Below, one piece after another: positions 6,915-54,325 of a stretch of DNA of 59,989 nt. Under the pieces are notes generated by a model. That model was not told where the DNA came from. It searched no databases and was given only the letters and a program-made list of their open reading frames with translations. Made by a program: the position numbers and the translations under genes. Origin of the DNA: Octopus sinensis (lineage: Eukaryota); contig NW_021835452.1 of NCBI RefSeq assembly GCF_006345805.1, positions 1 to 59,989 of the forward strand, written 5' to 3'. Position 1 is the stretch's first letter, and each line of letters starts with the position of its first letter.

Positions 6915-9245
<2,331 letters not shown>

Positions 9246-13727: not shown

Positions 13728-14403
13728 ATATCAACAATTGAGGGTAATTCTTTGTTTTTTTGGCTGCTATTTCTACTAAGTTCAGTATGTGGCAAAGTAA
13801 TTTATTTTACTAAGCCCAAATTATATAATGTAATATTTTGAATTCGCCTTAAATGGTCCTTTTACATACTGAACACTTGGTGAAATTGATTAATTAATTA
13901 ATTTTACCCTCAATTGTTGATATTATAATTCATTTCTCTCGGTCATACTGCCTCGGTTCTCGCGGTTAAAATATAATGTTTGCTAGATAGACCACGTGGG
14001 TGGAATGGGGAGTGCAGAGATTTACGCCTGCGCATTTTGAATTTGTTGACACTGTTTAGTTGGAGTGGTTCATCTGAAGCGACAAGTCGCTGATAGGTAA
14101 AGTTCCTTCTTTTTAGTGTTTCCAAATCCAAATTAAGAAATTTTGAGCTGACGAAAGAAATGCTGATTTTATTTGGCTAATCTTGAAACGTTGACGTACT
14201 CAAACGATCTATGTACTTGTGATATTTTTCTGTATTTACCTCCAAACCTTCGTGAGCTGTCTGGAGTAAACATTATCTGAGAGAAATTTTCTTTAAGTAG
14301 TAGAAATGCTAAGAATATTTTTTTTTTTTTTTTTTCGCTGCTATTTCTACTAAGTTCAGTATGTGGCAAAGTAATTTATTTTACTAAGCCGTAATTATAT
14401 AAT
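13728..14403 (+). mobile_element. hammerhead-containing retrozyme/Penelope pLTR-like element (574-bp unit plus about 60-bp terminal redundancy plus 20-bp inverted 5' end)
   Basis: 54-bp direct repeat at 13763-13816 and 14337-14390. 13728-13747 is the exact reverse complement of 13904-13923. Hammerhead at 14142-14204. (TA)n-rich flanks. Confidence 0.7.
14142..14204 (+). ncRNA. type I hammerhead ribozyme (predicted)
   Basis: Stem I tttgag(14142-47)/ctcaaa(14199-204); core CTGACGA 14148-54; stem II aaga/tctt extended by gctga/ttggc; GAAA 14185-88; stem III acgt-tg-acgt; GTA cleavage triplet ending at 14198. Confidence 0.8.
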
Positions 14404-16159: not shown

Positions 16160-16266
16160 GAAAATAATAATAATAATATAATAATAATAATAATAATAAT
16201 AATATATTATTATTATTATTATTATATTATTATTATTATTATTATTATTATCATTATCATAGTTTT

Positions 16267-16297
<31 letters not shown>

Positions 16298-16312
16298 TAA
16301 TAATAATATTAA

Positions 16313-16343
<31 letters not shown>

Positions 16344-16367
16344 GTTATTATAATAATAATAATAATA

Positions 16368-16400
<33 letters not shown>

Positions 16401-16409
16401 GTTATTATA

Positions 16410-16440
<31 letters not shown>

Positions 16441-16471
16441 TATTGTTATTTCATTAGTTATTATAATTATA

Positions 16472-16509
<38 letters not shown>

Positions 16510-16533
16510 TATTATTATTATTATTATATTATT

Positions 16534-16564
<31 letters not shown>

Positions 16565-16606
16565 TTATTATTATTACTATTATTATTATTATTATTATTA
16601 TTATTG
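16160..16606. repeat. (AAT)n/(ATT)n microsatellite with repeated strand switches
   Basis: Directly visible. Confidence 0.95.
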
Positions 16607-27611: not shown

Positions 27612-27826
27612 GACGGATGTGATGTCGTTTCAGCTCCGAAGGTAATCATTTATTTTGACCATTTAAAAGTGTATATTGACAAACATTTTGTGCTTAAAAG
27701 TTGTGCAACAACATCCACTGTAAACCTTTGATAAATATCGACACAAAAATTTTGCCCCTTGTGGGCAAAATTAAAAGAAAAAATTCTCATAGCCTTCGTG
27801 GTTTCATTTAGCCATTTTATTTCAAA

Positions 27827-29977
27827 ATGGCCACTGGCCACCACGAGGCTGAGTTGCAAGTGAAGCGTGACGCAGAAACAGAAAAACAGGATGCTCTGTT
27901 AGCATACGCCGAACCTGACAACTCCACCACCACCAACAGCAACAAATACAAAACAAAGGTCGCAAGGCCAAGCACCGTCAACACCATCAGTGAGTCCACC
28001 ACCACCACCACCACCAACACCATGGCAGAATCTGCTACTAAAACTGCTATCCCTACTAAAGATATCGCCACCAATAACAACATCACCATCACCGCCACCA
28101 AAGACCGTGCCGTCAATGCTACTAATACTACCAACACCACCGCCGTCACCAAGAACGACAATAACAACAACAACAACGACGACAACAACAATTCCCTTCA
28201 ACCACTGCTCACTCCATCACCAACAAGTGAAAAAATAACGACGACAAGCAAACGAAATGTCGAATTTTGCCCTAGTGCAGGACTAAAGTACGCAGGCAAT
28301 TTTCCACCCCTTCCTACTAGCACGATCGAACCAAACACACCAATTTTACAAACTGCAGCCAACAACAACATCACCACAAGCAACAACAATAACAAAACAA
28401 CAACAAATTTCGCTGAGGCGATTAAAGAAAAAAAAACAACAATATACTTTACGGCTCAACAAATACAGGACACGAACATCAAAATAACAGAATCAGAAGG
28501 TATAGTAAAATAAACATACCAGAAGATATTTTGGAAAATGAAAAAAGACGAACAATCATTTATAAAATAGTTAACAAAAAAACAAAAATCCCAGAGAAGG
28601 CCAACACAAGCAAAATAGAGAAGTGCTTGAAACCCATCTGGGATCACAAAGAATATGTAACCTGGTGGAACAAATTTGCCCACATACAAGTTGTTTTCTA
28701 CACCGAAGAGTTAGCTAGACATTTCTCAACGCTAACTCTTCACTCAGATGAACTCCAACTTACACCAAGCTATCGGGGACAGAAAGTGACTAAGATCACT
28801 CTAAACAATGTCCCCAATATAGCCAATAGTCTATGGCTTGTAAAGGCCTTATGCGTAAAAATGGCGAACTATACTATTTTGGAAACCACAGTCACAGAGC
28901 ATAAAAACTGGGTGGGACAAAAAAATAGAATTTCTTCTACATATACATCATGAGGATATAAAAAAAATACCCACCCAGATATGTGTATCAGACGACCACA
29001 AGTTATATGTGGTCGTCGATGGCAGAAGACCACGTTGCTACATATGCGGCAGTGAGCAACACCTCAAAAAAGACTGCAAATCTGCCGCAAGTAAACAACA
29101 GCAACAACAACAGCAGCCGGAAACAAAAACAAATAAAAAAGGTTTACTACCCACACCACTTTTTGCAGGAACAAACCTCACCAAACAAACAACCACACCA
29201 ACTGCAGCACCAAGAACAGAAGCAGCATCACCAACAACAACAACCAAGAATATACCAACTCCCAAACCAAGGACATCTGCCAAAAAGACACCCAGCAAAA
29301 ATGAAGAAACAATTACAACTCCAAATCCCCACAAAATTGAGACCCTAAACAACACAACAATACCCACAATCACTCAAACACAAAATACCCAAACCCCACA
29401 TCCAAAACCGCATACACCACAACCAAACACACCACCACCAACCACACCAACAACAAAACCAACACAGTCGACAATAGACCCAATTCTTTCCCTCTTCCAG
29501 ACTCCGATTCGTCTGATCTGTCATTAGACGAAGAAGACACGGAAGATTGGCAAATAGCCACAGGGGGGAGAAGAAAAAGGGAAAAAAAAGAAAAGAAAAA
29601 ATAACAAACAAAGCGGGAAGATACACACTCCCGAAACAAAAACATCCACAGAAAACACACACATCAACACAAACACACCACATCAAACCCCCCAAAAATG
29701 TTGACAGCCATAAACACAAACAACCACGACCTAATGGAACACATTAGGTCAAACACTAACATTACTGAAAACGACAAAAACAAGTAACCACCCACATACA
29801 ACACCACCACAACACATTAAAATAATACACGTGACACAGAACACATACAGCACCCTGAAATCTCTTTACCCTGATGCAGTAGGGAGATTTCAAAAGTACT
29901 CATCGAAAAAACTGTATAAAAGCCTCATAGAAGAAGACCGTGAGGTGAAAGACAAAGAACTTTCGAAAAACAAGTAA
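27827..29977 (+). CDS. retrotransposon ORF1 (gag-like nucleic-acid-binding protein), frameshifted as assembled
   Basis: aaaATGG start at 27827. T/N-rich N-terminus, RRM-like middle (RRTIIYKIVN..HIQVVFYTEELA..KVTKITLNNVP), zinc knuckle CYICGSEQHLKKDC, acidic/basic tail. Last coding-like block LKSLYPDAVGRFQKY..KNK* ends at 29977. Track ORFs 27827-28513, 28531-28953 and 29009-29527 are joined by frameshifts. Confidence 0.7.
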
Positions 29978-30019
29978 CCTTTTCTCTCTCCTTTTCCTTT
30001 TTTGCACTTTTATCGGAAC

Positions 30020-33000
30020 ATGCTCAGAATAGGTAGTATAAATGTACGTGGCTTGGGGTCGCCTTGGAAACAAGGCTACCTGTTAAATGACATCAAGTCA
30101 CTAAATCTGAATATCATAGCCATCAGTGAGACCAGACTCCACAGCTTGCGGGCACTCCAGCACATTTTCGGTACACATTTCAACATTTTTCTCCGTGTCT
30201 ACCGAGAATGGGCGGAGGTGGCACCGCGGTGCTTATCCGGAAGAGTCTGGATCTCAAAGTAAGAGCAAATTTCCTAGACCCGGAGGGTAGGCTGGTCGTT
30301 TTGGATGTCGATGGCAGCAATGAGTGTGCTTTTCGACTGATAGCAGTTTATGCTCCGTCCTTAACAGGCCGACCAGATTTCTTTCGACGTCTAGAGTCTT
30401 TCATGGGAACGTCTCGTCCTTTACTTTTAGTGGGGGATTGGAATGCCACCCTGGACACGCATCTAGACTACGTGGGCAGAGATAGCAATAGAAGGGGATG
30501 CAAATGCCTCAAAGACCTGCTCAGACGTTTCCAACTGTCTGACAGGTACCGACTGGACCACCCGAATGTGCCAATGTGGACATGGAGTAACCGCATCGGG
30601 TCGTCCAGATCATACTTAGACAGAGTATTCTGTAGGACAATAGATAAAAATAGTGTAGGTTGTCCACAATTTCATATAGTCAGTTACACAGATCACAAGT
30701 TTGTGACTTGTACACTTGACTTAGATAAGACACATAGGCAGGGTCCTGGTTACTGGAAACTGAACGCGTCTTTTACAGCACGACAGGTTTACAGGGACCG
30801 GATCAGCACATTAGTTAAGAGAGCTTTGACGGGTACCATCATCAACAACAGATGGTGGTATGCCCTAAAAAAAGCGATTAAAGCAGAATCAGTCAGATAC
30901 AGTAGAGCCTTAGCATTAGACCGAAATAGAATAGAGGGAGAATTAGTTAAGGTTTTAGAAGAGGCTCTTAGAACTGGCATCGCGTCCAACGTACTGGCGG
31001 CGAGATTGGCCCTCGACCAACACCTCAACGCCAAACACGAGGGATGCGTTGTCAGAGCTAGGATGCGTTGTCAGAGCTAGGATGCGTGCTCTGAGGAACG
31101 AAGGAGTTGGAGCCGCCCAAGAGGCCCGAGTGGTGGAGACGCAACGAGGCAACAGAGCCACCATCAAGTCTCTTATAGATGAACAGGGGCGCGAATTGCT
31201 CGAGCCTAAAAGGATGTGTGGGGTTTTTCAACAACACTTCACCCAACTGTTTGGGACAAGTGGTGAGTCAGAAAGCAGAGTGGACTTTAGTGCCTACCTG
31301 CATGCCTTGCCACGACTCTCAGCAAGGGAGGTGGAGTCTTGTGAAAAGCCTATCACAGCTGCGGACGTACAGGATGCGATGGTAGGCTGCGCGAGAGACA
31401 AGTCACCAGGCTTGGATGGTCTGCCCTACGAATTTTATTTTCATATGCCAGACTTGTTTGGAGGCGTCTTGGCAGCTGTCTACTGCAACTGGCAGCAGAA
31501 CGGGAGTATTCCTGCTTTTGTAAAGCGAGGAGCAGTGGCACTGATCAAGAAAGACCCAAACAAGGGGGACGTCATAGATAATTTCAGGCCCATCACTCTG
31601 CTCAACGCAGATTTGAAAATTTTGGCCAAGGTGTTAGCCGAGAGGTTGGCGCTTGTCATCAAGAAACTAATCGACAAGGCGCAAACATGCGCCGTGCCGG
31701 GTAGAAGTATTCATGACAACCTCCATCTGATGCGCTACATCATAGACAGGGTAGTTAAAAATCCTGGCATGGGTGGGGCGCTGATCAATTTGGATCAATC
31801 AAAAGCCTTCGATAGGGTAGACCATCACTACTTGGAGGCTGTCCTCAAAGCGGCTGGTTTCGGTCCAGTTTTCCGCGGTTGGATCGCTGCCTTATACAGC
31901 GGCATCCGCTCAGTAGTTCGCGTAAATGGTCATCTATCCAGACCTTTTAACATCATGCGTTCGGTTCGTCAGGGATGCCCCCTCTCATCGCTGCTGTATG
32001 TACTGACTCTTGAGCCACTACTGCGGAAACTGGCGACGCTGAGGGGCATCCCACGAGAGCTGGGATGCGGGAGGAGCGTGTCTGCATACGCGGATGACGT
32101 CACCGTCATAGTGTCGAGCTACGAGCACATCGAGCTGGTCGGCGAGACACTGAAAGAATACGAAGCGGTAACGGGAGCAAAAATTAACCGGGAAAAGTCA
32201 GTGGGCTTGCGGCTCGGCACCTGGAGAAGCAAGCCCATGCCGTCCAACAGCGTCTCCATCGTGGGACGCTGGACGGACGGACCGGTTAAATTGCTCGGGG
32301 TCTGGTTCGGTCCGGACCTCCAAATGGAGAAGAACTGGGGCGAGATAACGACTAGGGTGGCTACTCTCACCCAGAAATGGACTGAGAGAAAGCTATCCCT
32401 AAAAGGTCGGGCGGAGGTGGCGAACGCGTACATCGCATCCGTCATCGAGTATCGTCTGACCGTCGTGCCTTGTCCCGACCCTACCATCACCAAACTGGAA
32501 CGCATACTCTTCCGCTTCTTGTGGAAGGGAAACGTTCCGATGGTTAGGCGATCCATTTGCTGCCAACACCCGCTAAATGGAGGGCTGGGCATGCCGTGGT
32601 TGATGATGCGCAGACATGCGCTGAGACTGCGACATCTCCGGCGCTTCATAGACAACGGTGAACAGGGGTGGTCGCCTTTTGTGCGGCGCGCTTTCCCGCA
32701 GCTCGTCTCCTTGGACGAACTACAGTCATGGATCAAGCAGAGACCGAGGCTAGGCGAATGGCACCGCGAGTGTCGCGTTGCTCTCAAGCAACTCTGCCGT
32801 CCGGGATCGAACTTGTGCGACTCCATCACAACAAAGGCATTCTATAGAGGATTAGTGGAGGGGAGGTGCGACGACGAACTCGGGCAGAGTCTGGGCGTCG
32901 ACGAGGAACACCTGACCCGCCTGTTCAGGACAACTTTCGGGCCGGGACCTATGAACAATCACCAAAGATCCCTGGCCTGGCAGTGCTATCGAGAAGCATT

Positions 33001-33472
33001 ACCTGTTCGGGATAGCTCTACAGACACGGTTCCAGACACACTGGACCGACTTGCCCGAGATGCGGTCAGAGCGACGAAACCGTTCTGCACGCACTCGTGC
33101 AATGTCCAACCATTTCCGACCTGTGGGCTTATGCCGAACGGGCTGCTGTCACGTGTGGGACGAATCCGCCTATCGGCCGAGTCTATCGTGAGAATTGCTC
33201 CGCCCCCTTCCCTCAACCGGGAAGGCAAGGCAGTTTTCATCGTACTGGTGGCCATGGTGAAAGAATGTGTGTGGTGGACTCGAGCGAAAGGATTAGAGAC
33301 AAACACTTACCTCTCTGGCCAATCGCTCATCAACTTTTTCAAGTACCACTTGAAAAGGAAGGTGAGAATGGAGAGGGAAGTTTTGTCTCGCGAAAGATTC
33401 AAAAAAAGATGGGTGAATGTTGCAAAGATGGTGCGTGCTAGTAACGAAACCATTTTGAGCATGATCCTGTAG
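30020..33472 (+). CDS. retrotransposon ORF2: APE endonuclease, reverse transcriptase, C-terminal CCHC; frameshifted as assembled
   Basis: APE motifs SINVRG, ISETR, AVYAP, GDWNA, YLDR, TDH, YWKLN. RT motifs SPGLDG, FRPITLLN, DQSKAFD, RQGCPLS, YADD. CPRCGQSDETVLHALVQC at 33052-33105 in a shifted frame. Confidence 0.92.
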
Positions 33473-33772
33473 ATCGTAAAAAAGAAAGAAAGAGAGCATT
33501 TTTGACCTCATGTGTTTATTTCCTCCCTGACTGGGGTTCCCGTGGTCTTTTCTGTAGGCTTTTCTTCCCACGGATGAACCCAATCTTGTTATATCAATGT
33601 TTACACCATTATTCTGTGATACACGATTTCTTTTTTTCCTTTTTTTCCTCCTCTCGATCCCTTTTGATCGCAATCTTACATTTTTATTTTTTTCCACCCT
33701 CGAAAAGAAAAGCTCTGCATTTGTATTTGTCCCCTCTGTATTCAGCCCTGTGTGGCTAATAATAAAAGAAAG

Positions 33773-33776
<4 letters not shown>

Positions 33777-33845
<69 letters not shown>

Positions 33846-33880
33846 AATATATATATATATATAATATATATATGTATGTA
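33777..33880. repeat. (TATC)n-(TA)n microsatellite, 3' flank of the Tx1 element
   Basis: Directly visible. Confidence 0.95.
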
Positions 33881-33886
33881 TGTAGG

Positions 33887-35040
33887 TATAGGAGTTGGAC
33901 AACATAATGGAAACACCTAGCATAATTTTGAAATATCTATAAAAACGTCAAAAGCTTGTTTATTTTTATATTTTCTCTTTATTTATTATTAGTGTTACTG
34001 AATATGTTTTGCAAAAGTTGCTGTTTCTTTTCAGATATCATTAGTAAATGGTAATTGAAATTCATTAAAATGACGGATCATTCGGACTTTCGAAGAGGTC
34101 AAATTGTTGTTGCTCGTACGACAGGCGCTAGCATAATTGAAACGGCTGAAATGTTTGGTGTATCAAGAAGTACTATCTCGAAAGTAATGGCAGCTTTTGA
34201 AAAAGAAGGAAAAACCTCCTCGTCGAAACAAACTCCGGAAGAATACCCAAACTTTCAGATAGGGACCGGCGGACTCTTAAGCGAATTTTTAGAAAGGATC
34301 ACAAAATTACAGCTCCCAAAATTACTGCAGAGCTTAATGACCACCTCGAGATCCCACTTTCCACAATAAACCTTTCGCCGGGAGCTGCACGAAGTCGGAT
34401 TTCACTGGAGGGCTGCAATCAGAAAACCCCTACTTTCAAAAACAAACGGTGCAAAGCGTTTAGAGTGGAGCAATAACCTACAGAATTGGTCCCTGGAGCA
34501 GTGGAAGAATTTTATCTTCTCGGACGAGTCCTCTTTTAGCTTATTTCCGACCACCGGCCGAGTATACATGTGGAGACAGTCAAAAGAAGCATTTGATCCT
34601 GACTGCCTTCTTCCAACTGTTGAACATAGGGGAGGATTGTGATGATCTGGGTGGGGGGATATATCTTGAAAATCCGCCTGCCAAATGGTCTCCCTACATG
34701 TCAGAATCAATAGTCAAGACTATTTAACCATTTTATCTGATCAAATTCATCCTTTGGTTGTGGAACTGTTTCCGGAGGCAAACGCAGTTTTTGAGGATGA
34801 TAAAGCACCAATTCACACGGCTAAATTTCTTACTGAATGGCAGGAAGTACATTCTAGTGAAGTTGAACAATTTATCTGACCACCACACTCCCCAGATCTC
34901 AATATTGTTTAACATTTATGGAGCATTTTAGAAAAACAAATAAGTAGTCGATATCCTCCACTATCATCACAAGAACTGGAGAGTGTTTTAGCTGAAGAAT
35001 GGACAAAAATTCCTTTGGAAAAAATTCAAAGTTTGTGCTC
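33887..35040 (+). pseudogene. Tc1-family (DD34E) transposon fossil lacking the 3' TIR
   Basis: TIR-like taggagttggacaacataatggaaacacc. MTDHSDFRRGQIVVARTTGAS..FGVSRSTISKV; AIRKPLL..RLEW; FIFSDES (D1); FEDDKAPIH (D2); PHSPDLNIV*HLW (E mutated). Frameshifts and stops present. Confidence 0.88.
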
Positions 35041-37399: not shown

Positions 37400-38105
37400 A
37401 AATTCCGCCGAGATCGACTTTGCCTTTCATCCTTTCGGGGTTGATAAATTAAGTACCAGTTGCGGACTGGGGTCGATCTAATCGACTGGACCCTCCCCCA
37501 AAATCCCGGGCCTTGTGCCTAGAGTAGAAAATAATATTACAGTTAGAAAATTGCAGTTTAGGGCAGCGAGCTGGCAGAAACGTTAGCACGCCGGGCGAAA
37601 TGCTTAGTGGTATTTCGTCTGAATTTACGTTCTGAGTTCAAATTCGGCCGAAGTCGACTTTGAATTTCATCCTTTCGGGATCGATTAAATAAGTACCAGT
37701 TACCCACTGGAGTCGATATAATCGACTTAATCCGTTTGTATGTCCTTGTTTGTCCTCTCTAGGTATTTCGTCTGTCTCAACGTTCAGAGTTCAAATTCCG
37801 CCGAGGTCGACTTTGCTTTTCATCCTTCGGGGTCAAATAGATGAGCACCAGTTACACACTGGGGTCGATGTAATGGACTTAATCCCTTTGTCTGTCCTTG
37901 TGTGTCCCCTCTATATCTAACCCCCTGTGGGCAATAAAGAAATAAATACTGCACTTAGAATAAAGCAGCGAACTGTCAGAATCGTTTGCACGGCGATCGA
38001 AATGCTTGGCAGTATTTCGTCTGTCTTTACGTTCTGAGTTCAAATTCCGCCAAGATCGACTTTGCCTTTCATCCCTGCGGGGTCGAGGAATTAAGAACCA
38101 GTGAA
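37400..38105 (+). mobile_element. cluster of four family-B SINE copies
   Basis: aaattccgccgaggtcgactttgcctttcatcctttcggggtcgat..aagtaccag recurs at about 37405, 37640, 37795 and 38040. Heads read ggcagcgagctggcagaa. Confidence 0.85.
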
Positions 38106-42208: not shown

Positions 42209-43010
42209 TATCAGATTGAGTGAAAAATAAGCAACGTTTTGAACCATGAAGAATTTGTAGTGGAATTTTGCAGAGTTTTGAATGTTTTTCAAACATTCTT
42301 TTTGCAATTGTCTGATAATACATGCATAGACTTGCCCAAAAGCATCAATAAATTAACATTGATATTTCTTTTCCCCGTTGTTACAATCGTCTGAAATGGA
42401 ACTGTCAAAGCGCGATTTTCGAGCAATTTTGCTATTCAACTTCAAAAAAGAGCGTAAAGCAGCTGAAACCTCTCGCAATATCAACGAGGCGTTTGATGAG
42501 GAAATGACCAGTGAGTGGTCAGCTCGAAAATGGTTTAAACGATTTCGCAGTGGAGACCTGAGCCTTGAAGATCGTGAGAGTAGTGGACGCCCATCTGTCA
42601 TCGGTGACAGTCAATTACAGACCGTCATTGAGAAAGATCCACGTAAAACCACTGGCTAAAAACTTCAGGTTAGCCAGAAAATTGCATGCAACCATTACAC
42701 ACGATCTGAAAATCAAAAAACCTCGCCATATAGGCACCACACGATTTGAAGGAGAATCAGAAAATATGCTGATATGAAATTTGCTTCGCTTCTTCTTCGT
42801 AACCAGACTAATCTATTTCTCAAACGTATTGTAAATTGCGGTGAAACAGGGATTATGTACAATAATTTTAAAAAAATTCTTTGCAGTTGTTGGACCCAAA
42901 TGAAGCACCGAAAACTTCCCTTCAAAAAGAAGTTTATGGTGACTGTTTCGTGGTGTAAAGAAAATGCTTTCAACTGGGAATAGACTTCAATTAAGTTTCC
43001 AACCACCGCC
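42209..43010 (+). pseudogene. mariner transposase fossil
   Basis: ATG 42396: MELSKRDFRAILLFNFKKERKAAETSRNINEAF..RKWFKRFRSGDLSLEDRESSGRP (mariner HTH). Later CGETGIMYNN (TGDEKWILYDN-like) and KKFMVTVSW. Frameshifted. Confidence 0.85.
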
Positions 43011-44890: not shown

Positions 44891-45251
44891 CACACATTCT
44901 CTCTCTGCAACACTCCACCTGAAACCGTAATTCGGATGACGCTAGTAAATTAACTACTTGCTACCTGAAACCGTCTGCTTCCTACAGCCCACTCTACAGA
45001 TTAAACACAACCCAAGAGTATCCAGGTGGTCCCCTAATAATTCATGTTTCCTTCGTTGGGCATGTGTGTTTATGTGCCTGTACGTGAGGGTTTATGTATG
45101 TATGTATGTATGTATGTGCGTGTGTATGTGCATATAGGCATACACATATATGGAAATATGTATAGGTCTATGTATGTATTCATGTATGAATGTGTGAGTG
45201 TATCTGTCTATACATACATATGATGCGTGTACATCAAGATATATTTATATG

Positions 45252-45285
<34 letters not shown>

Positions 45286-45526
45286 ATATATATTTATAAT
45301 TAATCAATATAGGGTGGCAAGGAAAATTTTGTAGAATTTTATTGCCACCAGCGGCCCAGCGGGAAAAAAATTAAATAGTCATAGACCATTTTTAAGTTCA
45401 ACATTAACAATTAAGGAACGGCCATAATAGGCCATTCACCCACTAGAAATAACAGCCAAGCTTCTACCGCAAATAAAGATCAATTCCGTAAACAGGAGAG
45501 AAAATTAAAAAAACATTTACCCTGTA

Positions 45527-45633
45527 ATTTCTTGTACGGTATACCGTTTCATCCGTTGTTTAATGGTAAACCAACCTAATTAAATTAAATCAAGCCAATC
45601 TTCCATAAGCCCTCGGATTCATCAGCAAGAAAT
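45527..45633 (-). ncRNA. type I hammerhead ribozyme (first of ten minus-strand copies; the last ends at about 50015)
   Basis: Minus strand: AUUUCUUG-CUGAUGA-AUCCG-(58 nt)-CGGAU-GAA-ACGGUAUACCGU-A/CAAGAAAU. 8-bp stem I, 5-bp base of stem II, palindromic stem III, GUA cleavage between 45535 and 45534. Confidence 0.9.
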
Positions 45634-48600
45634 AGCTCTCGGGACAGATAATTACACGAGGCATATCCAATCTTGCCAAGTCAATATCTGACCTAAAATT
45701 TTCAAATCGTCGCACTCGCGCCAAATTTATCGGCAGCAAATAAATATCAGCCGTCGATTCCATTACGGAATTAACCAAAAAATTCATAATTAATCAATAT
45801 AGGGTGGCAAGGAAAATTTTGTAGAATTTTATTGCCACCAGCGGCCCAGCGGGAAAAAAATTAAATAGTCATAGACCATTTTTAAGTTCAACATTAACAA
45901 TTAAGGAACGGCCATAATAGGCCATTCACCACTAGAAATAACAGCCAAAGCTTCTACCGCAAATAAAGATCATTCCGTAAACAGGAGAAAATTAAAAAAA
46001 CATTTACCCTGTAATTTCTTGTACGGTTTATACCGTTTCATCCGTTGTTTAATGGTAAACCAACCTAATTAAATTAAATCAAGCCAATCTTCCATAAGCC
46101 CTCGGATTCATCAGCAAGAAATAGCTCTCGGGACAGATAATTACACGAGGCATATCCAATCTTGCCAAGTCAATATCTGACCTAAAATTTTCAAATCGTC
46201 GCACTCGCGCCAAATTTATCGGCAGCAAATAAATATCAGCCGTCGATTCCATTACGGAATTAACCAAAAATTCATAATTAATCAATATAGGGTGGCAAGG
46301 AAAATTTTGTAGAATTTTATTGCCACCAGCGGCCCAGCGGGAAAAAAATTAAATAGTCATAGACCATTTTTAAGTTCAACATTAACAATTAGGAACGGCC
46401 ATAATAGGCCATTCACCCACTAGAAATAACAGCCAAAGCTTCTACCGCAAATAAAGATCAATTCCGTAAACAGGAGAAAATTAAAAAAACATTTACCCTG
46501 TAATTTCTTGTACGGTATACCGTTTCATCCGTTGTTTAATGGTAAACCAACCTAATTAAATTAAATCAATAAGCCAATCTTCCATAAGCCCTCGGATTCA
46601 TCAGCACAAGAAATAGCTCTCGGGACAGATAATTACACGAGGCATATCCAATCTGCCATCCAAGTCAATATCTGACCTAAAATTTTCAAATCGTCGCACT
46701 CGCGCCAAATTTTCGGCAGCAAATAAATATCAGCCGTCGATTCCATTACGGAATTAACCAAAAAATTCATAATTAATCAATATAGGGTGGCAAGGAAAAT
46801 TTTGTAGAATTTTATTGCCACCAGCGGCCCAGCGGGAAAAAAATTAAATAGTCATAGACCATTTTTAAGTTCAACATTAACAATTAAGGAACGGCCATAA
46901 TAGGCCATTCACCCACTAGAAATAACAGCCAAAGCTTCTACGCAAATAAAGATCAATTCCGTAAACAGGAGAAAATTAAAAAAACATTTACCCTGTAATT
47001 TCTTGTACGGTATACCGTTTCATCCGTTGTTTAATGGTAAACCAACCTAATTAATTAAATCAAGCCAATCTTCCAAGCCCTCGGATTCATCAGCAAGAAA
47101 TAGCTCTCGGGACAGATAATTACACGAGGCATATCCAATCTTGCCAAGTCAATATCTGACCTAAAATTTTCAAATCGTCGCACTCGCGCCAAATTTATCG
47201 GCAGCAAATAATATCAGCCGTCGATTCCATTACGGAATAACAAAAAATTCATAATTAATCAATATAGGGTGGCAAGGAAAATTTTGTAGAATTTTATTGC
47301 CACCAGCGGCCCAGCGGGAAAAAAATTAAATAGTCATAGACCATTTTTAAGTTCAACATTAACAATTAAGGAACGGCCATAATAGGCCATTCACCCACTA
47401 GAAATAACAGCCAAGCTTCTACCGCAAATAAAGATCAATTCCGTAAACAGGAGAAAATTAAAAAAACATTTACCCTGTAATTTCTTGTACGGTATACCGT
47501 TTCATCCGTTGTTTAATGGTAAACCAACCTAATTAAATTAAATCAAGCCAATCTTCCATAAGCCCTCGGATTCATCAGCAAGAAATAGCTCTCGGGACAG
47601 ATAATTACACGAGGCATATCCAATCTTGCCAAGTCAATATCTGACCTAAAATTTTCAAATCGTCGCACGCGCGCCAAATTTATCGGCAGCAAATAAATAT
47701 CAGCCGTCGATTCCATTACGGAATTAACCAAAAAATTCATAATTAATCAATATAGGGTGGCAAGGAAAATTTTGTAGAATTTTATTGCCACCAGCGGCCC
47801 AGCGGGAAAAAAATTAAATAGTCATAGACCATTTTTAAGTTCAACATTAACAATTAAGGAACGGCCATAATAGGCCATTCACCCACTAGAAATAACAGCC
47901 AAAGCTTCTACCGCAAATAAAGATCAATTCCGTAAACAGGAGAAAATTAAAAAAACATTTACCCTGTAATTTCTTGTACGGTATACCGTTTCATCCGTTG
48001 TTTAATGGTAAACCACCTAATTAAATTAAATCAAGCCAATCTTCCATAAGCCCTCGGATTCATCAGCAAGAAATAGCTCTGGGACAGATAATTACACGAG
48101 GCATATCCAATCTTGCCAAGTCAATATCTGACCTAAAATTTTCAAATCGTCGCACTCGCGCCAATTTATCGGCAGCAAATAAATATCAGCCGTCGATTCC
48201 ATTACGGAATTAACCAAAAAATTCATAATTAATCAATATAGGGTGGCAAGGAAAATTTTGTAGAATTTTATTGCCACCAGCGGCCCAGCGGAAAAAAATT
48301 AAATAGTCATAGACCATTTTTAAGTTCAACATTAACAATTAAGGAACGGCCATAATAGGCCATTCACCCACTAGAAATAACAGCCAAAGCTTCTACCGCA
48401 AATAAAGATCAGTTCCGTAAACAGGAGAAAATTAAAAAAACATTTACCCTGTAATTTCTTGTACGGTATACCGTTTCATCCGTTGTTTAATGGTAAACAA
48501 CCTAATTAAATTAAATCAAGCCAATCTTCCATAAGCCCTCGGATTCATCAGCAAGAAATAGCTCTCGGGACAGATAATTACACGAGGCATATCCAATCTT

Positions 48601-50556
48601 GCCAAGTCAATATCTGACCTAAAATTTTCAAATCGTCGCACTCGCGCCAAATTTATCGGCAGCAAATAAATATCAGCCGTCGATTCCATTACGGAATTAA
48701 CCAAAAAATTCATAATTAATCAATATAGGGTGGCAAGGAAAATTTTGTAGATTTTATTGCCACCAGCGGCCCAGCGGGAAAAAAATTAAATAGTCATAGA
48801 CCATTTTTAAGTTCAACATTAACAATTAAGGAACGGCCATAATAGGCCATTCACCCACTAGAAATAACAGCCAAAGCTTCTACCGCAAATAAAGATCAAT
48901 TCCGTAAACAGGAGAAAATTAAAAAAACATTTACCCTGTAATTTCTTGTACGGATACCGTTTCATCCGTTGTTTAATGGTAAACCAACCTAATTAAATTA
49001 AATCAAGCCAATCTTCCATAAGCCCTCGGATTCATCAGCAAGAAATAGCTCTCGGGACAGATAATTACACGAGGCATATCCAATCTTGCCAAGTCAATAT
49101 CTGACCTAAAATTTTCAAATCGTCGCACTCGCGCCAAATTATCGGCAGCAAATAAATATCAGCCGTCGATTCCATTACGGAATTAACCAAAAAATTCATA
49201 ATTATCAATATAGGGTGGCAAGGAAAATTTTGTAGAATTTTATTGCCACCAGCGGCCCAGCGGGAAAAAAATTAAATAGTCATAGACCATTTTTAAGTTC
49301 AACATTAACAATTAAGGAACGGCCATAATAGGCCATTCACCCACTAGAAATAACAGCCAAAGCTTCTACCGCAAATAAAGATCAATTCCGTAAACAGGAG
49401 AAAATTAAAAAAACATTTACCCTGTAATTTCTTGTACGGTATACCGTTTCATCCGTTGTTTAATGGTAAACCAACCTAATTAAATTAAATCAAGCCAATC
49501 TTCCATAAGCCTCGGATTCATCAGCAAGAAATAGCTCTCGGGACAGATAATTACACGAGGCATATCCAATCTTGCCAAGTCAATATCTGACCTAAAATTT
49601 TCAAATCGTCGCACTCGCGCCAAATTTATCGGCAGCAAATAAATATCAGCCGTCGATTCCATTACGGAATTAACCAAAAAATTCATAATTAATCAATATA
49701 GGGTGGCAAGGAAAATTTTGTAGAATTTTATTGCCACCAGCGGCCCAGCGGGAAAAAAGTTAAATAGTCATAGACCATTTTTAAGTTCAACATTAACAAT
49801 TAGGAACGGCCATAATAGGCCATTCACCCACTAGAAATAACAGCCAAAGCTTCTACCGCAAATAAAGATCAATTCCGTAAACAGGAGAAAATTAAAAAAA
49901 CATTTACCCTGTAATTCTTGTACGGTATACCGTTTCATCCGTTGTTTATGGTAAACCACCTAATAAATAAATCAAGCCAATCTTCCATAAGCCCTCGGAT
50001 TCATCAGCAAGAAATAGCTCTCGGGACAGATAATTACACGAGGCATATCCAATCTTGCCAAGTCAATATCTGACCTAAAATTTTCAAATCGTCGCACTCG
50101 CGCCAAATTTATCGGCAGCAAATAAATATCAGCCGTCGATTCCATTACGGAATTAACCAAAAAATTCATAATTAATCAATATAGGGTGGCAAGGAAAATT
50201 TTGTAGAATTTTATTGCCACCCTCGGCCCAGCGGGAAAAAAATTAAATAGTCATAGACCATTTTTAAGTTCAACATTAACAATTAATGTTAATTGTTAAT
50301 GTTGAACTTAAAAATGGTCTATGACTATTTAATTTTTTTCCGCTGGGCACTGGTGGCAATAAAATTCTACAAAATTTTCCTTGCCACCCTATATTGATTA
50401 ATTATGAATTTTTTGGTTAATTCCGTAATGGAATCGACGGCTGATATTTATTTGCTGCCGATAAATTTGGCGCGAGTGCGACGATTTGAAAATTTTAGGT
50501 CAGATATTGACTTGGCAAGATTGGATATGCCTCGTGTAATTATCTGTCCGAGAGCT

Positions 50557-50663
50557 ATTTCTTGCTGATGAATCCGAGGGCTTATGGAGAGATTGGCTTG
50601 ATTTAATTTATTAGGTTAGTTTACCATTAAACAACGGATGAAACGGTATACCGTACAAGAAAT
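50557..50663 (+). ncRNA. type I hammerhead ribozyme in the inverted unit
   Basis: atttcttg 50557-64, CTGATGA 50565-71, atccg..cggat, GAAA, acggtataccgt, cleavage after A50655, caagaaat 50656-63. Confidence 0.88.
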
Positions 50664-50785
50664 TACAGGGTAAATGTTTTTTAATTTTCTCCTGTTTACG
50701 GAATTGATCTTTATTTGCGGTAGAAGCTTTGGCTGTTATTTCTAGTGGGTGAATGGCCTATTATGGCCGTTCCTTAATTGTTAAT

Positions 50786-51599
50786 ATATATATATATATT
50801 ATATATATATATATAATCATGCCTATATATATATACCTATGCTTATATACGTATATATATATATACACACACGCGCGCACCTACATATACATACACTTAC
50901 ACACTCACATACATAAGTATCTATCAATCCATATATACATAAAATATATATATATATGTGTGTGTGATGTACTTATATATATATGTGTGTATATATGTAT
51001 ATATATATATATATTTATATTCATATATATATATATATATACATGCATGCATATGTAGATGTGTGTATAGGTACATATATATGCATCTATATACACATAT
51101 ATACATATATATACATACTGTAGAGATTTTGTGTTGTGTGTTGTGTATATATATGCGTGTATGTGCACGTATGCATTTGTATATGTATGTATGCATGCAA
51201 GTATGTATATATATTATATATATATATATATATGAATGTATGTAGGAACGTATGTATGTATATATAAACTTGTTTCTTAACGATGAGAACGATTTCGGAT
51301 GAAAATAGTTCAAAGCTATTTCATGTCACTCTCAATAATTACGAGAGCCGCTCGTTACTATATATATATGTATATACATTTTTTTTTTGCTATATTTCCT
51401 TTTCATTGTTTTTCACTTTTCCACCAGACTTAACAGTGGGTTGGATATGGTACTGACATAAGGAAATCTGCACCAGCCCTTCTTTGCGTCCTATATACTT
51501 TAGACATTTCCTATCCCTCTATTCTGTTGTATTGTTTGAAAACATGAAGCTCTTATCTGCCTCATCATCATTATTATTATTATTATTATTATTATATTA

Positions 51600-51640
<41 letters not shown>

Positions 51641-51790
51641 TGATTATTGTTATTATTATTATTATTATATTACTAATATCATTATTATATTATTATTATT
51701 ATTTTATTTTATTATTATTATTACTTTTTTTTTTCTTCTTTCAAATTTTCTTCCATTTCTGCCGAGTGTCTTCCCTATGATATTATTATA

Positions 51791-51839
<49 letters not shown>

Positions 51840-51991
51840 GTTAGATTATTATTATTATTATTATTATTATTATTGTTATTATATATATTATTATATTATT
51901 ATTATTATTATTGTAATTAATTATTATTATTATATTATTACTATTTCATTATTATTATATTACTATTATCATTATTATTATTATTATATTA

Positions 51992-52029
<38 letters not shown>

Positions 52030-52096
52030 TCGTATTATTGTTATTATTATTTATTTTATATTATTATTATATTATTATTATTATTATTATTATTAT

Positions 52097-52129
<33 letters not shown>

Positions 52130-52192
52130 TATCATTATTATTATATTATTATTATTGTTATTATATTATTAATTATTATTACTATTATCATT

Positions 52193-52223
<31 letters not shown>

Positions 52224-52567
52224 TTATTATTATTACTTTTTTTTTCTTCTTTCAAATTTTCTTCCATTTCTTGCCGAGTGTCTTCCCTATTATTATTATT
52301 TTATTATTATTATTATTATTATTATTATGATTATTATTATTATTATTATTATTATTATTTTATCTTATCACTGTCATCATGACTAACATCCTTATTCTCA
52401 TTACTGCCATTATTGCTAGTATTACTGTTGTAGTTAATTATTATCCTTATTTATATCATTATCATCATCAATGTCGTCGTCGTCGTCATCATCATTGTTA
52501 TCACCATCATCGTCACCATCATCTTCGTTTTTGTTATTCTCTCTTCTCCTTTTTCATATTATTATTA

Positions 52568-53074: not shown

Positions 53075-54325
53075 GTGTTTATGGCGTACTTTCTCTACAC
53101 AAAGGAGCACAGCTATGTGTGCCTAAGATATGTGCTGGGGTTTCTTGTGCTGCTCATATATTCACGGTATTGAAAGTGTTTTACGTAGGATGTGTGCAGT
53201 GCCTCATAGTACTATTTTCTGTATGTTATATATACTTGTAAGCCCTGGTGTTTTTGATATGTATTTGTCTGAATGTTTTTTTTATCATACCTAATGCGCC
53301 TAATATAATAGGAATTGTTACTGTTTTCAGGATGCACTTTTGAGTAACCTCTGTTTCCAGATTTTGTATTTTGAAAGTTTTAGAGAAACGTTGCCATTTG
53401 TTGGTATTGATACATCAGTTAGAAAAGGTTTTTGTTTTCCTTGTTGATCTCTGACAACTATGTCGTGTCTATTAGCCTTCATTTCTCTATCTGTGTTTAT
53501 TGGCCTATCCTAGAATATGGTGGCTTTCTCATTTTCTGTGGCCTTTTCTGGCGTGTGCCTATACCACCTTTTTTTAATCTTCTTATTCCATAGTTTTGGC
53601 ATAGCTTCCAGTTTATATAGGTCCCAACTCCGTTGTGTCTGTGAATATAGTCCTTCTTAGCCAGGACTGGGCACTCAGTGCCAGAGATTTATCGTTTCTT
53701 CTCCATCACCACTTATTCTGCAGCTACTTGCATTTTTTTTTCATTACATATTTTTGGTGATTTCTGGCGGGAAGATTTTGATCATATGCTGCAATTAAAA
53801 TCCTTCAGTCTCTGCTTTGAGTTCCTGAGCTTCTCAGCCACTGTTGGGATTTTGCTTAGTCTATTTCTTTTTTGTTTAGCTTAACCCAATATTTGCCTGA
53901 AGGCGCTTTACTTGCCATCGTTTTATCATGATCCTTTCCAGTCCCAGTTTTACTTTGGATTTTAGTTGTTTTACAAGTTTTATTGTTTCTTCTTTATCTT
54001 CATAGTTGCTAGGTGCTATGACTTCGTTTCTGTATATGTCAGCTTCCTTAAAGACAGAAAATAGTTCTTTGTTTTGTGCGTGTATTATAGCTATTTGTAT
54101 TAGTTTTCCTTGCTTCTGAAGTAGATTTTCTGTAGTTATATGTTGATTATTTTGTAATAGTTTTCTAACTGTACAAGGCCACTAACCCCTTCGATATATT
54201 GTATATATAGCCTTTTTTATGTCAAATTTTGCGTGGTGGATCCTAAATTCTGGCATTATTTTTCTTGTTTTCCTGTCTATTTTGATTAGTTCATTTAAAA
54301 TCCACTTAAGAATATTGAAAAGAAA
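53075..54325 (-). mobile_element. second 5'-truncated R4/Dong-type fragment
   Basis: Colinear with 9426-10700 over about 1.2 kb (gcgtaggatgtgtgcagtgcct, tctctgacaactat, ttttcttgttttcctgtctattttg), with many substitutions. Confidence 0.85.

What the first reader, a model, noticed from the sequence alone, without database searches (positions are those of the whole stretch)
45296..50785. Tandem 489-bp array in which every unit encodes a type I hammerhead ribozyme: a retrozyme-like circular-RNA element
Seen: each unit's minus strand reads AUUUCUUG-CUGAUGA-AUCCG...CGGAU-GAAA-CGGUAUACCG-UA/CAAGAAAU, with all conserved core bases and three helices; a few copies carry small indels. There are ten head-to-tail copies plus one inverted copy. 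Established: a transcript spanning tandem hammerheads self-cleaves to unit-length RNAs that can circularise. This is described for newt satellite 2, Schistosoma SM-alpha, cricket pDo500 and non-LTR retrozymes of corals, mussel and axolotl, which are thought to be mobilised by Penelope-like elements. Inference: this is a non-coding retrozyme family yielding a ~489-nt (circular) RNA. I do not know whether it has been reported in cephalopods.
Basis: partly seen in the sequence, partly recalled or inferred. Interest (0 to 1): 0.92.

Follow-up and report, generated by a model that had tools for sequence, protein, structure and literature searches.

The report
Hammerhead-ribozyme tandem repeat (retrozyme), probably cephalopod
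A 5.5-kb block of near-identical 489-bp repeats, each encoding a self-cleaving hammerhead RNA motif, looks like a retrozyme, a small non-coding mobile element thought to spread through circular RNA; it seems to be an unreported cephalopod member of a known class, not a new kind of system.

Summary
Window 45292-50286 is a head-to-tail array (period 487-489, 10.25 units, about 98-99.8% identical). One inverted unit lies at 50289-50785. Ten type I hammerhead motifs lie on the minus strand and one on the plus strand. All core bases are present. The isolated motif and the whole 489-nt monomer both fold at minimum energy into the three-helix hammerhead. A structural descriptor gives zero hits in random sequence. 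Rfam Hammerhead_1 scores only 20-22 bits against a gathering score of 34, because helix II carries a 68-nt extension. Every sequence-testable feature of metazoan non-LTR retrozymes is met: tandem units of a few hundred bp, 36% GC, no coding capacity, no LTR, and a strongly self-paired sense RNA. The locus also has a Penelope-like insertion layout: tandem copies, an inverted copy at the 5' end, and both outer ends in (TA)n. No Penelope element lies nearby. Self-cleavage, circular RNA, dispersal in the genome and covariation could not be tested, and no relatives could be retrieved. The host is probably an octopod. I found no report of retrozymes in cephalopods. Verdict: a real feature and a new member of a known kind, with an unusual hammerhead variant.

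The parts
45292..50286 (-). Sense tandem array: consensus 120-489, nine full 489-nt units, then consensus 1 to about 238-242 (10.25 units)
   Evidence: TRF period 487, 10.3 copies, 98%; BLAST of the consensus; unit alignment
50289..50785 (+). Inverted copy, consensus 120-489 plus 1-131 (501 nt, 1.02 units). It lies head-to-head at the 5' end of the sense array.
50247..50328 (.). Centre of the roughly 500-bp palindrome. The arms meet at 50287/50288 with a 2-nt spacer, at a TTAA motif. Rfam mislabels it as weak miRNA-like hairpins.
45239..45291 (.). (AT)n tract next to the 3' end of the sense array. It is either the target microsatellite or a 3' tail.
50786..50865 (.). (AT)n tract next to the 3' end of the inverted copy
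45527..45633 (-). Hammerhead copy 1: helix I 8 bp, core CUGAUGA at 45625-45619, 68-nt helix II, GAAA, palindromic helix III, cleavage between 45535 and 45534
46014..46122 (-). Hammerhead copy 2 (helix III loop UAUAAA); cleavage after 46022
46503..46614 (-). Hammerhead copy 3, with a TG insertion between helix I and the core and a TTA insertion in helix II. It fails the descriptor and is probably inactive if the insertions are real.
46998..47101 (-). Hammerhead copy 4 (small deletions in the helix II extension); cleavage after 47006
47480..47586 (-). Hammerhead copy 5, in the unit closest to the consensus (47488-47976); cleavage after 47488
47969..48074 (-). Hammerhead copy 6; cleavage after 47977
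48454..48559 (-). Hammerhead copy 7; cleavage after 48462
48941..49046 (-). Hammerhead copy 8 (helix III loop shortened); best Rfam Hammerhead_1 score, 22.3 bits
49427..49532 (-). Hammerhead copy 9; cleavage after 49435
49913..50015 (-). Hammerhead copy 10 (1-nt deletion in the 3' strand of helix I, leaving 6 contiguous bp); cleavage after 49921
50557..50663 (+). Hammerhead of the inverted copy; cleavage after 50655

Best explanation
This is a non-autonomous, non-coding retroelement of the metazoan 'non-LTR retrozyme' class, in a genome that is probably that of an octopod cephalopod. The minus strand of the array would be transcribed as a multimer. Each unit's type I hammerhead would cut after GUA (for example between 45535 and 45534). 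That would release 489-nt RNAs with 5'-OH and 2',3'-cyclic phosphate ends. The hammerhead junction holds these two ends side by side, so a host RNA ligase, or the ribozyme's own reverse reaction, can close them into a circle. The 12-nt palindromic helix III (ACGGUAUACCGU) would also allow the two-copy 'double hammerhead' form in multimeric transcripts. The near-identical tandem copies are best explained by one integration event, in which a reverse transcriptase ran about ten times round a circular (or multimeric) RNA template. That enzyme most likely comes from a Penelope-like element elsewhere in the genome. Shown here: the array, the complete core, the fold, the lack of coding capacity and the locus layout. 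Inferred: transcription, cleavage, circularisation, and the identity of the reverse transcriptase.
For: The array and its 11 motifs are real. The core is complete: C3-A9 is CUGAUGA, G12-A14 is GAA, A15.1 pairs with U16.1, C15.2 with G16.2, H17 is A, and C1.1 pairs with G2.1. All 45 positions of Rfam Hammerhead_1 align. The 122-nt motif folds into the hammerhead junction at minimum energy, -32 kcal/mol, z -3.8. The whole 489-nt monomer keeps that junction, with helix I (nt 1-8 with 393-400) closing a branched body: -140.2 kcal/mol, z -4.43, 61% paired. The antisense strand reaches only -96.9 kcal/mol. The sense strand is G+U-rich and 24 of its 150 pairs are G.U. The descriptor gives no hit in random sequence. 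GC is 36%. The longest ORF is 65-68 aa, is broken in several copies and has no homologue. No RT or GIY-YIG domain lies within about 9 kb on either side. Published retrozyme features match: type I hammerhead, tandem units of 150-450 bp (51-972 bp in a 2026 survey), GC below 50%, no LTR/PBS/PPT, self-paired RNA. The layout matches described Penelope-type insertions: partial tandems, an inverted copy at the 5' end, and microsatellite targets including (TA)n. None of the array ends falls at the cleavage site. Both 3' ends lie in A/T-only runs next to (TA)n, with a joint chance of about 0.008. This fits target-primed reverse transcription on an uncleaved or circular template. The units differ almost only by homopolymer indels typical of long-read error, so they are essentially identical, as expected from a single event.
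Against: Rfam Hammerhead_1 stays below its gathering score (20.5-22.3 against 34 bits). The base pair at 10.1-11.1 is A-U, whereas G-C is described as highly conserved in canonical hammerheads. Compensatory changes at that pair do occur in the cricket pDo500 satellite. Helix II is a 68-nt extended hairpin instead of about 4 bp plus a loop, so the usual loop-loop tertiary contacts cannot be recognised. Only one locus is visible. No dispersed copies, target-site duplications, covariation or expression data could be obtained. No Penelope-like element is in the window, and the only intact retroelement there is an AP-endonuclease LINE. Near-identity of the units is equally expected from recent unequal crossing-over.
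Confidence: 0.72

Rival explanations
1. It is an ordinary local satellite. A sequence that contains a real or former hammerhead was amplified at the DNA level by unequal crossing-over or replication slippage. The inverted copy arose by a fold-back replication error. No RNA-mediated mobility or circular RNA is involved today.
For: Only one locus is seen in 60 kb. The units are essentially identical, as in homogenised satellites. The inversion junction sits at a short self-complementary TTAA, where DNA-level template switches also occur. Classical hammerhead satellites such as pDo500, also about 500 bp, were first described in just this way.
Against: The sense RNA is strongly and strand-specifically structured, and the hammerhead junction survives in the global fold. 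Both outer ends abut (TA)n within A/T runs, with 3' ends facing outwards. The layout matches a retroelement insertion pattern. Hammerhead satellites tested so far were all transcribed and self-cleaving.
Confidence: 0.13
2. The element is a retrozyme, but an AP-endonuclease LINE such as the one 12 kb away mobilised it, not a Penelope-like element. The inverted copy would then result from LINE-type twin priming.
For: A LINE with apparently open endonuclease and RT reading frames lies at about 27.8-33.9 kb, and its 3' end carries (TATC)n and (AT)n microsatellites. Twin priming by LINE machinery is an established source of 5' inversions (own knowledge). Insertion at A/T-rich DNA fits AP-endonuclease nicking preferences (own knowledge). 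A review states that retrozyme repeats carry no motif that identifies their autonomous partner.
Against: Retrozymes co-occur with Penelope-like elements in 32 of 35 species, and in Xenopus their sequences group with Penelope pseudo-LTRs. Type I hammerheads are a Penelope feature. BLAST found no significant similarity between the unit and the LINE, only a chance 14-nt match at 31610-31623. There is no poly(A) or (TATC)n tail.
Confidence: 0.08
3. The array is a string of solo pseudo-LTRs left by a Penelope-like element that lost its coding region, not an independent retrozyme family.
For: Penelope pseudo-LTRs carry hammerheads and form tandem and inverted structures. Retrozymes appear to derive from pseudo-LTRs.
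Against: There is no RT or GIY-YIG remnant inside the array or within about 9 kb. Ten identical units without any internal region are not the usual partial-tandem Penelope structure. Metazoan Penelope hammerheads are mostly minimal variants that lack a stable helix III, whereas this one has a 4-bp helix III.
Confidence: 0.05
4. Part of the picture is an assembly artefact. The copy number, the palindromic junction and the indels would reflect long-read assembly problems in a repeat, not the real locus.
For: There are 27 private indels against 9 substitutions, mostly homopolymer deletions. Sequence errors cluster near the palindrome centre. Penelope-type tandem and inverted structures are known to cause assembly trouble.
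Against: The inverted arm does not mirror the array beyond 501 nt. It ends in its own (AT)n tract and unique flank, unlike a fold-back chimeric read. The hammerhead and the tandem organisation do not depend on the exact copy number.
Confidence: 0.15

Closest known systems
Metazoan non-LTR retrozymes (Cervera and de la Pena 2020, PMC7229834): coral about 225-245 nt, mussel Mytilus galloprovincialis about 350-390 nt, axolotl 330-350 nt
   Same: A type I hammerhead in one polarity, head-to-tail units of a few hundred bp, low GC, no ORF, no LTR/PBS/PPT, and a highly self-paired predicted RNA with the hammerhead ends side by side. The mussel hammerheads also lack the archetypal loop-loop nucleotides.
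   Different: The unit, at 489 nt, is longer than the 170-400 nt quoted for invertebrates, though it lies within the 51-972 bp of the 2026 survey. Helix II is a 68-nt extended hairpin. The 10.1-11.1 pair is A-U. Helix III is stable (4 bp with a tetraloop). Expression as circular RNA is not shown here. The host lineage, cephalopods, is not among those described.
pDo500 satellite of Dolichopoda cave crickets (PMC2837043)
   Same: A tandem unit of about 500 bp with one hammerhead per unit. Single and double hammerhead forms have been proposed for it. Natural variation at 10.1-11.1 is tolerated through compensatory change.
   Different: The pDo500 hammerhead is compact (49 nt). It makes up about 5% of the genome and is conserved across species with documented compensatory mutations. 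None of this could be examined here.
[quoted passage not shown]
   Same: Type I topology, a palindromic helix III region, a helix II longer than usual, and the insertion layout of tandem copies plus an inverted copy at the 5' end in a microsatellite.
   Different: Metazoan Penelope hammerheads are minimal, usually lack helix III, keep G10.1-C11.1 and often carry an extra base between positions 9 and 10.1. Here there is a full helix III, A10.1-U11.1, no extra base and no RT/GIY-YIG ORF.
Rfam RF00163 Hammerhead_1; newt satellite 2 and Schistosoma Sm-alpha type
   Same: All 45 consensus positions align, with the same core and topology.
   Different: The score of 20.5-22.3 bits is below the gathering score of 34. 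Newt and Schistosoma motifs have a helix II of about 4 bp with a conserved loop and a helix III of 1-2 bp.

Membership tests
Hammerhead ribozyme, type I (structural definition) | Conserved core: C3 U4 G5 A6 N7 G8 A9, G12 A13 A14, the A15.1-U16.1 pair, and H17 (not G) at the cleavage site | tested here: met
   The sequence reads CUGAUGA ... GAA A ... U A in all 11 copies. One copy has a TG insertion next to the core.
Hammerhead ribozyme, type I (structural definition) | Three helices around the core, with helix I open-ended | tested here: met
   Helix I has 8 bp, helix II has 5 bp plus an extension, and helix III has 4 bp. This is the minimum-energy fold of both the 122-nt motif and the 489-nt monomer. 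Ten of 11 copies pass the descriptor, against 0 hits in random sequence.
Hammerhead ribozyme, type I (structural definition) | Base pairs supported by covariation among family members | not testable with these tools
   The units are essentially identical and no relatives could be retrieved.
Hammerhead ribozyme, type I (structural definition) | Self-cleavage activity | not testable with these tools
   This needs in vitro transcription.
Rfam RF00163 Hammerhead_1 | Covariance-model score at or above the gathering score (34 bits) | tested here: not met
   No hit at gathering. Scores are 20.5-22.3 bits. The full model aligns, but the insert of about 57 nt in loop 2 and the A-U pair at 10.1-11.1 lower the score.
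Canonical metazoan type I hammerhead (Schistosoma or newt type) | Helix II of about 4 bp capped by a loop that docks on loop 1, with G10.1-C11.1 | tested here: not met
   Helix II is a 68-nt extended hairpin and the 10.1-11.1 pair is A-U. The definition comes from PMC4209133.
Canonical metazoan type I hammerhead (Schistosoma or newt type) | Palindromic 15.2-16.2 positions and loop 3, allowing a dimeric hammerhead | tested here: met
   ACGGUAUACCGU is a perfect 12-nt palindrome.
Metazoan non-LTR retrozyme | Head-to-tail tandem units of a few hundred bp, each with one type I hammerhead | tested here: met
   There are 10.25 units of 489 bp. Published ranges are 150-450 bp and 51-972 bp.
Metazoan non-LTR retrozyme | GC content below 50% | tested here: met
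   36.4%.
Metazoan non-LTR retrozyme | Non-coding and non-autonomous, with no LTR, PBS or PPT | tested here: met
   The longest ORF is 65-68 aa, is broken in several copies and has no homologue. No terminal repeats exist beyond the unit itself. No RT or endonuclease lies in the flanks. PBS and PPT were not searched for specifically.
Metazoan non-LTR retrozyme | Monomer RNA predicted to be stable and highly self-paired | tested here: met
   -140.2 kcal/mol, z -4.43, 61% paired, with the sense strand much more stable than the antisense.
Metazoan non-LTR retrozyme | Many dispersed genomic copies, with target-site duplications when visible | not testable with these tools
   Only this window is available and it holds one array. 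Any duplication is hidden by the (AT)n flanks.
Metazoan non-LTR retrozyme | Expression as unit-length linear and circular RNA | not testable with these tools
   No transcript data could be reached.
Metazoan non-LTR retrozyme | Co-occurrence with Penelope-like elements in the same genome | tested here: inconclusive
   None is in the window. The literature reports Penelope elements in a squid genome and Naiad remnants in cephalopods.
Penelope-type insertion architecture | Partial tandem copies, an inverted 5'-truncated copy at the 5' end, and insertion into a microsatellite | tested here: met
   The layout comes and the description from PMC8557442. The 30-40 bp 'tail' that paper mentions was not recognised.
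Penelope-like element (autonomous) | An ORF with reverse transcriptase and GIY-YIG endonuclease | tested here: not met
   No such domain lies in or around the array. The window's RT has an AP-type endonuclease.

The most novel reading that the evidence does not exclude
The locus may be a frozen record of one integration event that reveals the mechanism. A break in a (TA)n microsatellite would have offered two 3' ends. Each primed reverse transcription on a circular 489-nt RNA at an A/U-only stretch. One cDNA ran about 10.25 turns by rolling circle. The other stopped after almost exactly one turn (501 nt, 1.02 units), where the enzyme met its own starting point. The two cDNAs then joined head-to-head at a TTAA. 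If other insertions repeat this pattern, it would be direct structural evidence that animal retrozymes integrate from circular templates by a Penelope-like, twin-primed mechanism. It would also mean that each such locus can produce a roughly 500-bp hairpin RNA able to feed small-RNA silencing of the family.
Probability: 0.25. Interest if true: 0.6.

Novelty: new member of a known kind. Interest (0 to 1): 0.42.

Why it matters
Retrozymes are among the most abundant sources of small circular RNA in invertebrates, reaching up to about 1% of total RNA in mussel. Their partner enzyme and their mode of integration are still inferred rather than shown. A cephalopod family would extend the known range within molluscs to a lineage noted for unusual RNA biology. 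It would also explain part of the 'Hammerhead_1' hits listed without comment in cephalopod genome papers. Rfam misses this variant at its gathering score, because of the 68-nt helix II and the A10.1-U11.1 pair, so routine annotation probably undercounts such elements. The clean layout of this locus offers a concrete pattern for testing the rolling-circle, Penelope-type integration model genome-wide.

Tried and rejected
1. Rfam at gathering thresholds over the whole window gave no hit. The permissive scans gave only sub-threshold Hammerhead_1 matches plus spurious miRNA-like hits on the (TG/TA)n flanks and the palindrome centre, which I rejected as low-complexity or hairpin artefacts.

2. I used the recurrent 65-aa sense-strand ORF as a handle to retrieve other copies from public assemblies. 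The exact look-up found nothing and the homology search found no candidate. The ORF is treated as spurious.

3. A DNA pattern scan (hammerhead core plus the base of helix II, with the insert free) gave 4 hits in metagenome contigs. All were chance matches without helix I or any other similarity. The same scan of viral contigs gave 0 hits.

4. I checked 22 kb of Argonauta hians DNA and a 3-kb contig carrying the related LINE for the unit and found nothing.

5. I looked for a Penelope-like partner. The window's RT is an AP-endonuclease LINE. Stop-free segments within about 9 kb of the array gave only a decayed mariner HTH_48 domain.

6. I tested whether the flanks beyond the (AT)n tracts mirror each other, as an inverted duplication or fold-back read would predict. 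They do not.

7. My first idea that the junction hexamer TTAATT is self-complementary was wrong. Only the TTAA tetramer is.

8. A second hammerhead-like motif at 14142-14205 passed the descriptor. It does not fold as a hammerhead and has no Rfam support, so it is not counted as part of the finding.

9. ARAGORN found no tRNA-like genes.

Full report
THE OBSERVATION. Tandem Repeats Finder reports one large array at 45292-50286: period 487, 10.3 copies, 98% matches, score 9616. AUUUCUUG-CUGAUGA-AUCCG ... CGGAU-GAAA-CGGUAUACCG-UA/CAAGAAAU occurs ten times on the minus strand and once on the plus strand. I cut the array at the predicted cleavage sites and aligned the nine full units, which gave a 489-nt consensus. 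BLAST of that consensus against the window gives the exact layout.

- On the minus strand, 50286 down to 45292 holds consensus 120-489, nine full units, then consensus 1 to about 238-242.
- On the plus strand, 50289-50785 holds consensus 120-489 followed by 1-131.
- Nothing else in the 60-kb window resembles the unit.

MORE THAN CHANCE. I wrote a relaxed structural descriptor: helix I of at least 5 bp, CUGANGA, helix II of at least 4 bp with up to 90 nt enclosed, GAAA, helix III of at least 3 bp, then U and a non-G base. It recovers 10 of the 11 copies. It gives no hit in 200 random 60-kb sequences or in 20000 random 489-nt units of the same composition. The copy it misses (46614-46503) has a TG insertion between helix I and the core.

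THE RIBOZYME. All core positions are present: C3-A9 is CUGAUGA, G12-A14 is GAA, A15.1 pairs with U16.1, C15.2 with G16.2, H17 is A, and C1.1 pairs with G2.1. All 45 consensus positions of Rfam Hammerhead_1 align. The 122-nt region folds at minimum energy into the three-way junction, -32 kcal/mol with z -3.8. Three features depart from the canonical metazoan type I motif as defined in PMC4209133.

- Helix II is 5 bp (AUCCG/CGGAU) extended by a long imperfect hairpin, 68 nt in all, instead of about 4 bp plus a loop.
- The 10.1-11.1 pair is A-U rather than the 'highly conserved' G-C. Compensatory changes at this pair are documented in the cricket pDo500 hammerhead.
- Helix III is stable: 4 bp including A15.1-U16.1, with a UAUA loop.

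One feature agrees with the metazoan pattern. Helix III with its loop, ACGGUAUACCGU, is a perfect palindrome, which is what allows two neighbouring copies to form a double hammerhead. The long helix II insert and the A-U pair explain why Rfam scores only 20.5-22.3 bits against a gathering score of 34, and why the default scan finds nothing. Membership of RF00163 by score is therefore not met, although the structural definition is.

THE WHOLE UNIT. The 489-nt monomer, cut at the ribozyme site, folds to -140.2 kcal/mol with z -4.43 and 61% of bases paired. The global minimum keeps the hammerhead. Nucleotides 1-8 pair with 393-400 as helix I and close a branched body of about 385 nt. The 5' and 3' ends sit side by side at the junction, which suits ligation. 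The antisense RNA reaches only -96.9 kcal/mol with z -3.18. The sense strand is G+U-rich, and 24 of its 150 pairs are G.U, which suggests structure at the RNA level on the hammerhead strand. GC is 36%. The longest ORF is 65-68 aa on the sense strand. It is interrupted in several copies and has neither an exact match nor a homologue in the protein collection. No other ribozyme family matches either strand.

VARIATION. The nine full units differ by 27 indel events and 9 substitutions in 4386 nt. Every event is private to one unit, and 19 indels are single-base deletions in homopolymer runs. Such an indel-to-substitution ratio is not what biological divergence looks like. It is typical of long-read consensus error. 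The real units are therefore probably about 99.9% identical. Two consequences follow. The array carries no covariation signal. It is also either very young, made in one event, or kept homogeneous.

THE LOCUS LAYOUT. The inverted copy lies at the 5' end of the sense array, head-to-head. The arms meet at 50287/50288 with a 2-nt spacer at a TTAA, which makes a palindrome with arms of about 500 bp. Both outward-facing ends are 3' ends in the sense of the RNA, and both run directly into (AT)n tracts, at 45239-45291 and 50786-50865. The flanks beyond these tracts are not mirror images, so this is not a simple fold-back read. None of the end points coincides with the ribozyme cleavage site. The two 3' ends fall at the end of A/T-only runs of 9 and 5 nt, and the joint chance of that in this unit is about 0.008. 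The inverted copy is 501 nt, or 1.02 units.

[quoted passage not shown] I read the layout as the trace of target-primed reverse transcription from both sides of a break in a (TA)n tract, on a circular or multimeric template. This is inference from one locus. DNA-level fold-back replication or LINE-type twin priming could give a similar picture.

SURROUNDINGS AND HOST. No reverse transcriptase or GIY-YIG endonuclease lies in the array or within about 9 kb on either side. The only domain found there is a decayed mariner HTH_48 near 42.4-42.7 kb. The one apparently open retroelement in the window, at about 27.8-33.9 kb on the plus strand, has a zinc-knuckle ORF, an AP-type endonuclease and an RVT_1 domain. 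It is therefore a LINE, not a Penelope-like element. Its closest named relative is a protein of the octopod Argonauta hians at 62% identity. Unnamed sequences from an NCBI assembly and from JGI samples reach 68-69%.

RELATIVES. I could not retrieve any, and the full list of attempts is in the section on what was tried and rejected. The exact ORF look-up, the protein homology search, the metagenome pattern scan (four chance hits), the viral scan and the fetched cephalopod DNA were all negative. The collections at hand hold almost no animal genomic DNA that can be searched by nucleotide sequence. These negatives therefore say nothing about how widespread the family is.

COMPARISON WITH WHAT IS KNOWN. 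Metazoan non-LTR retrozymes are defined by several features: type I hammerheads in short tandem repeats (150-450 bp), multiple copies, no LTR/PBS/PPT, GC below 50%, and abundant self-paired circular RNAs of about 170-400 nt. They were demonstrated in a coral, a mussel and the axolotl (PMC7229834). A 2026 preprint widens the consensus length range to 51-972 bp. It reports that 75% of families have at most seven units per array. It also links retrozymes to Penelope pseudo-LTRs by co-occurrence and by phylogeny in Xenopus. The present element meets every feature that sequence can test. It differs in the details of its hammerhead and in unit length, where it resembles the roughly 500-bp pDo500 satellite.

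I found no paper in the library that reports retrozymes or hammerhead repeats in cephalopods. The giant squid genome paper lists 235 Hammerhead_1 matches without further analysis. The PLE survey mentions only old Naiad remnants in cephalopods.

VERDICT. It is a new member of a known kind, not a new kind. Its main points of interest are three: the lineage, a hammerhead variant that standard annotation misses, and a locus layout that can be used to test the proposed integration mechanism. Cleavage, circularisation, mobility and the partner enzyme remain inferred.

Noticed in passing
window 14142-14205 (+): A solitary hammerhead-like motif, UUUGAG-CUGACGA-AAGA..(22 nt)..UCUU-GAAA-CGUUGACG-UA/CUCAAA. 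It has all core bases and shares A10.1-U11.1 and the GUA triplet with the array motif. It passes my descriptor, which gave 0 hits in random sequence. However, its minimum-energy fold is not a hammerhead (z -0.29), and Rfam gives no hammerhead match even at E<=10. It may be a decayed relic of another retrozyme or Penelope family, or a chance match.
   Followed up: partly
window about 27800-33900 (+): A LINE with apparently open reading frames: an ORF with a CCHC zinc knuckle (29009-29527), an AP-type endonuclease (30208-31080) and a reverse transcriptase (31049-33472). These are followed by (TATC)n at 33774-33860 and (AT)n. The endonuclease and RT frames overlap by about 30 nt in different frames. 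The closest named relative is from Argonauta hians (62%).
   Followed up: partly
window about 42363-43000 (+): A decayed mariner-type transposase remnant. Pfam HTH_48 matches with E 9e-16, and the reading frame is broken by stops.
   Followed up: partly
window 37609-37913; related pieces near 41.6 kb, 43.5-43.9 kb and 52.6-52.8 kb: A 152-bp unit present twice in tandem (84% match). Similar sequence recurs elsewhere in the window, seen as recurring translated strings such as STPV-NWYL-RKDE-QSR. It is probably a dispersed SINE-like repeat. ARAGORN finds no tRNA-like structure.
   Followed up: no
window 53300-53700 (-) and 9817-10215 (-): Short translated remnants that resemble each other (strings such as NRHDIVV and WKLCQ-YGI). 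From memory they look like the C-terminal part of invertebrate LINE ORF2 proteins. They are probably old truncated LINE 3' ends.
   Followed up: no
whole window, for example 6915-7338, 8735-9218, 16205-16605, 51570-52363: Long trinucleotide microsatellites are unusually dense (ATG, GAT, TAT and ATT, each up to 160-270 repeats), alongside many (TA)n and (AC)n tracts. They produce long spurious low-complexity ORFs.
   Followed up: no
window 45590-45787 (-) and the equivalent position in other units: A 65-68 aa ORF recurs on the sense strand of the unit and overlaps the 5' half of the hammerhead. The unit length (489) is divisible by 3. The ORF has no homologue, is broken in about half the copies, and is treated as spurious.
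   Followed up: yes
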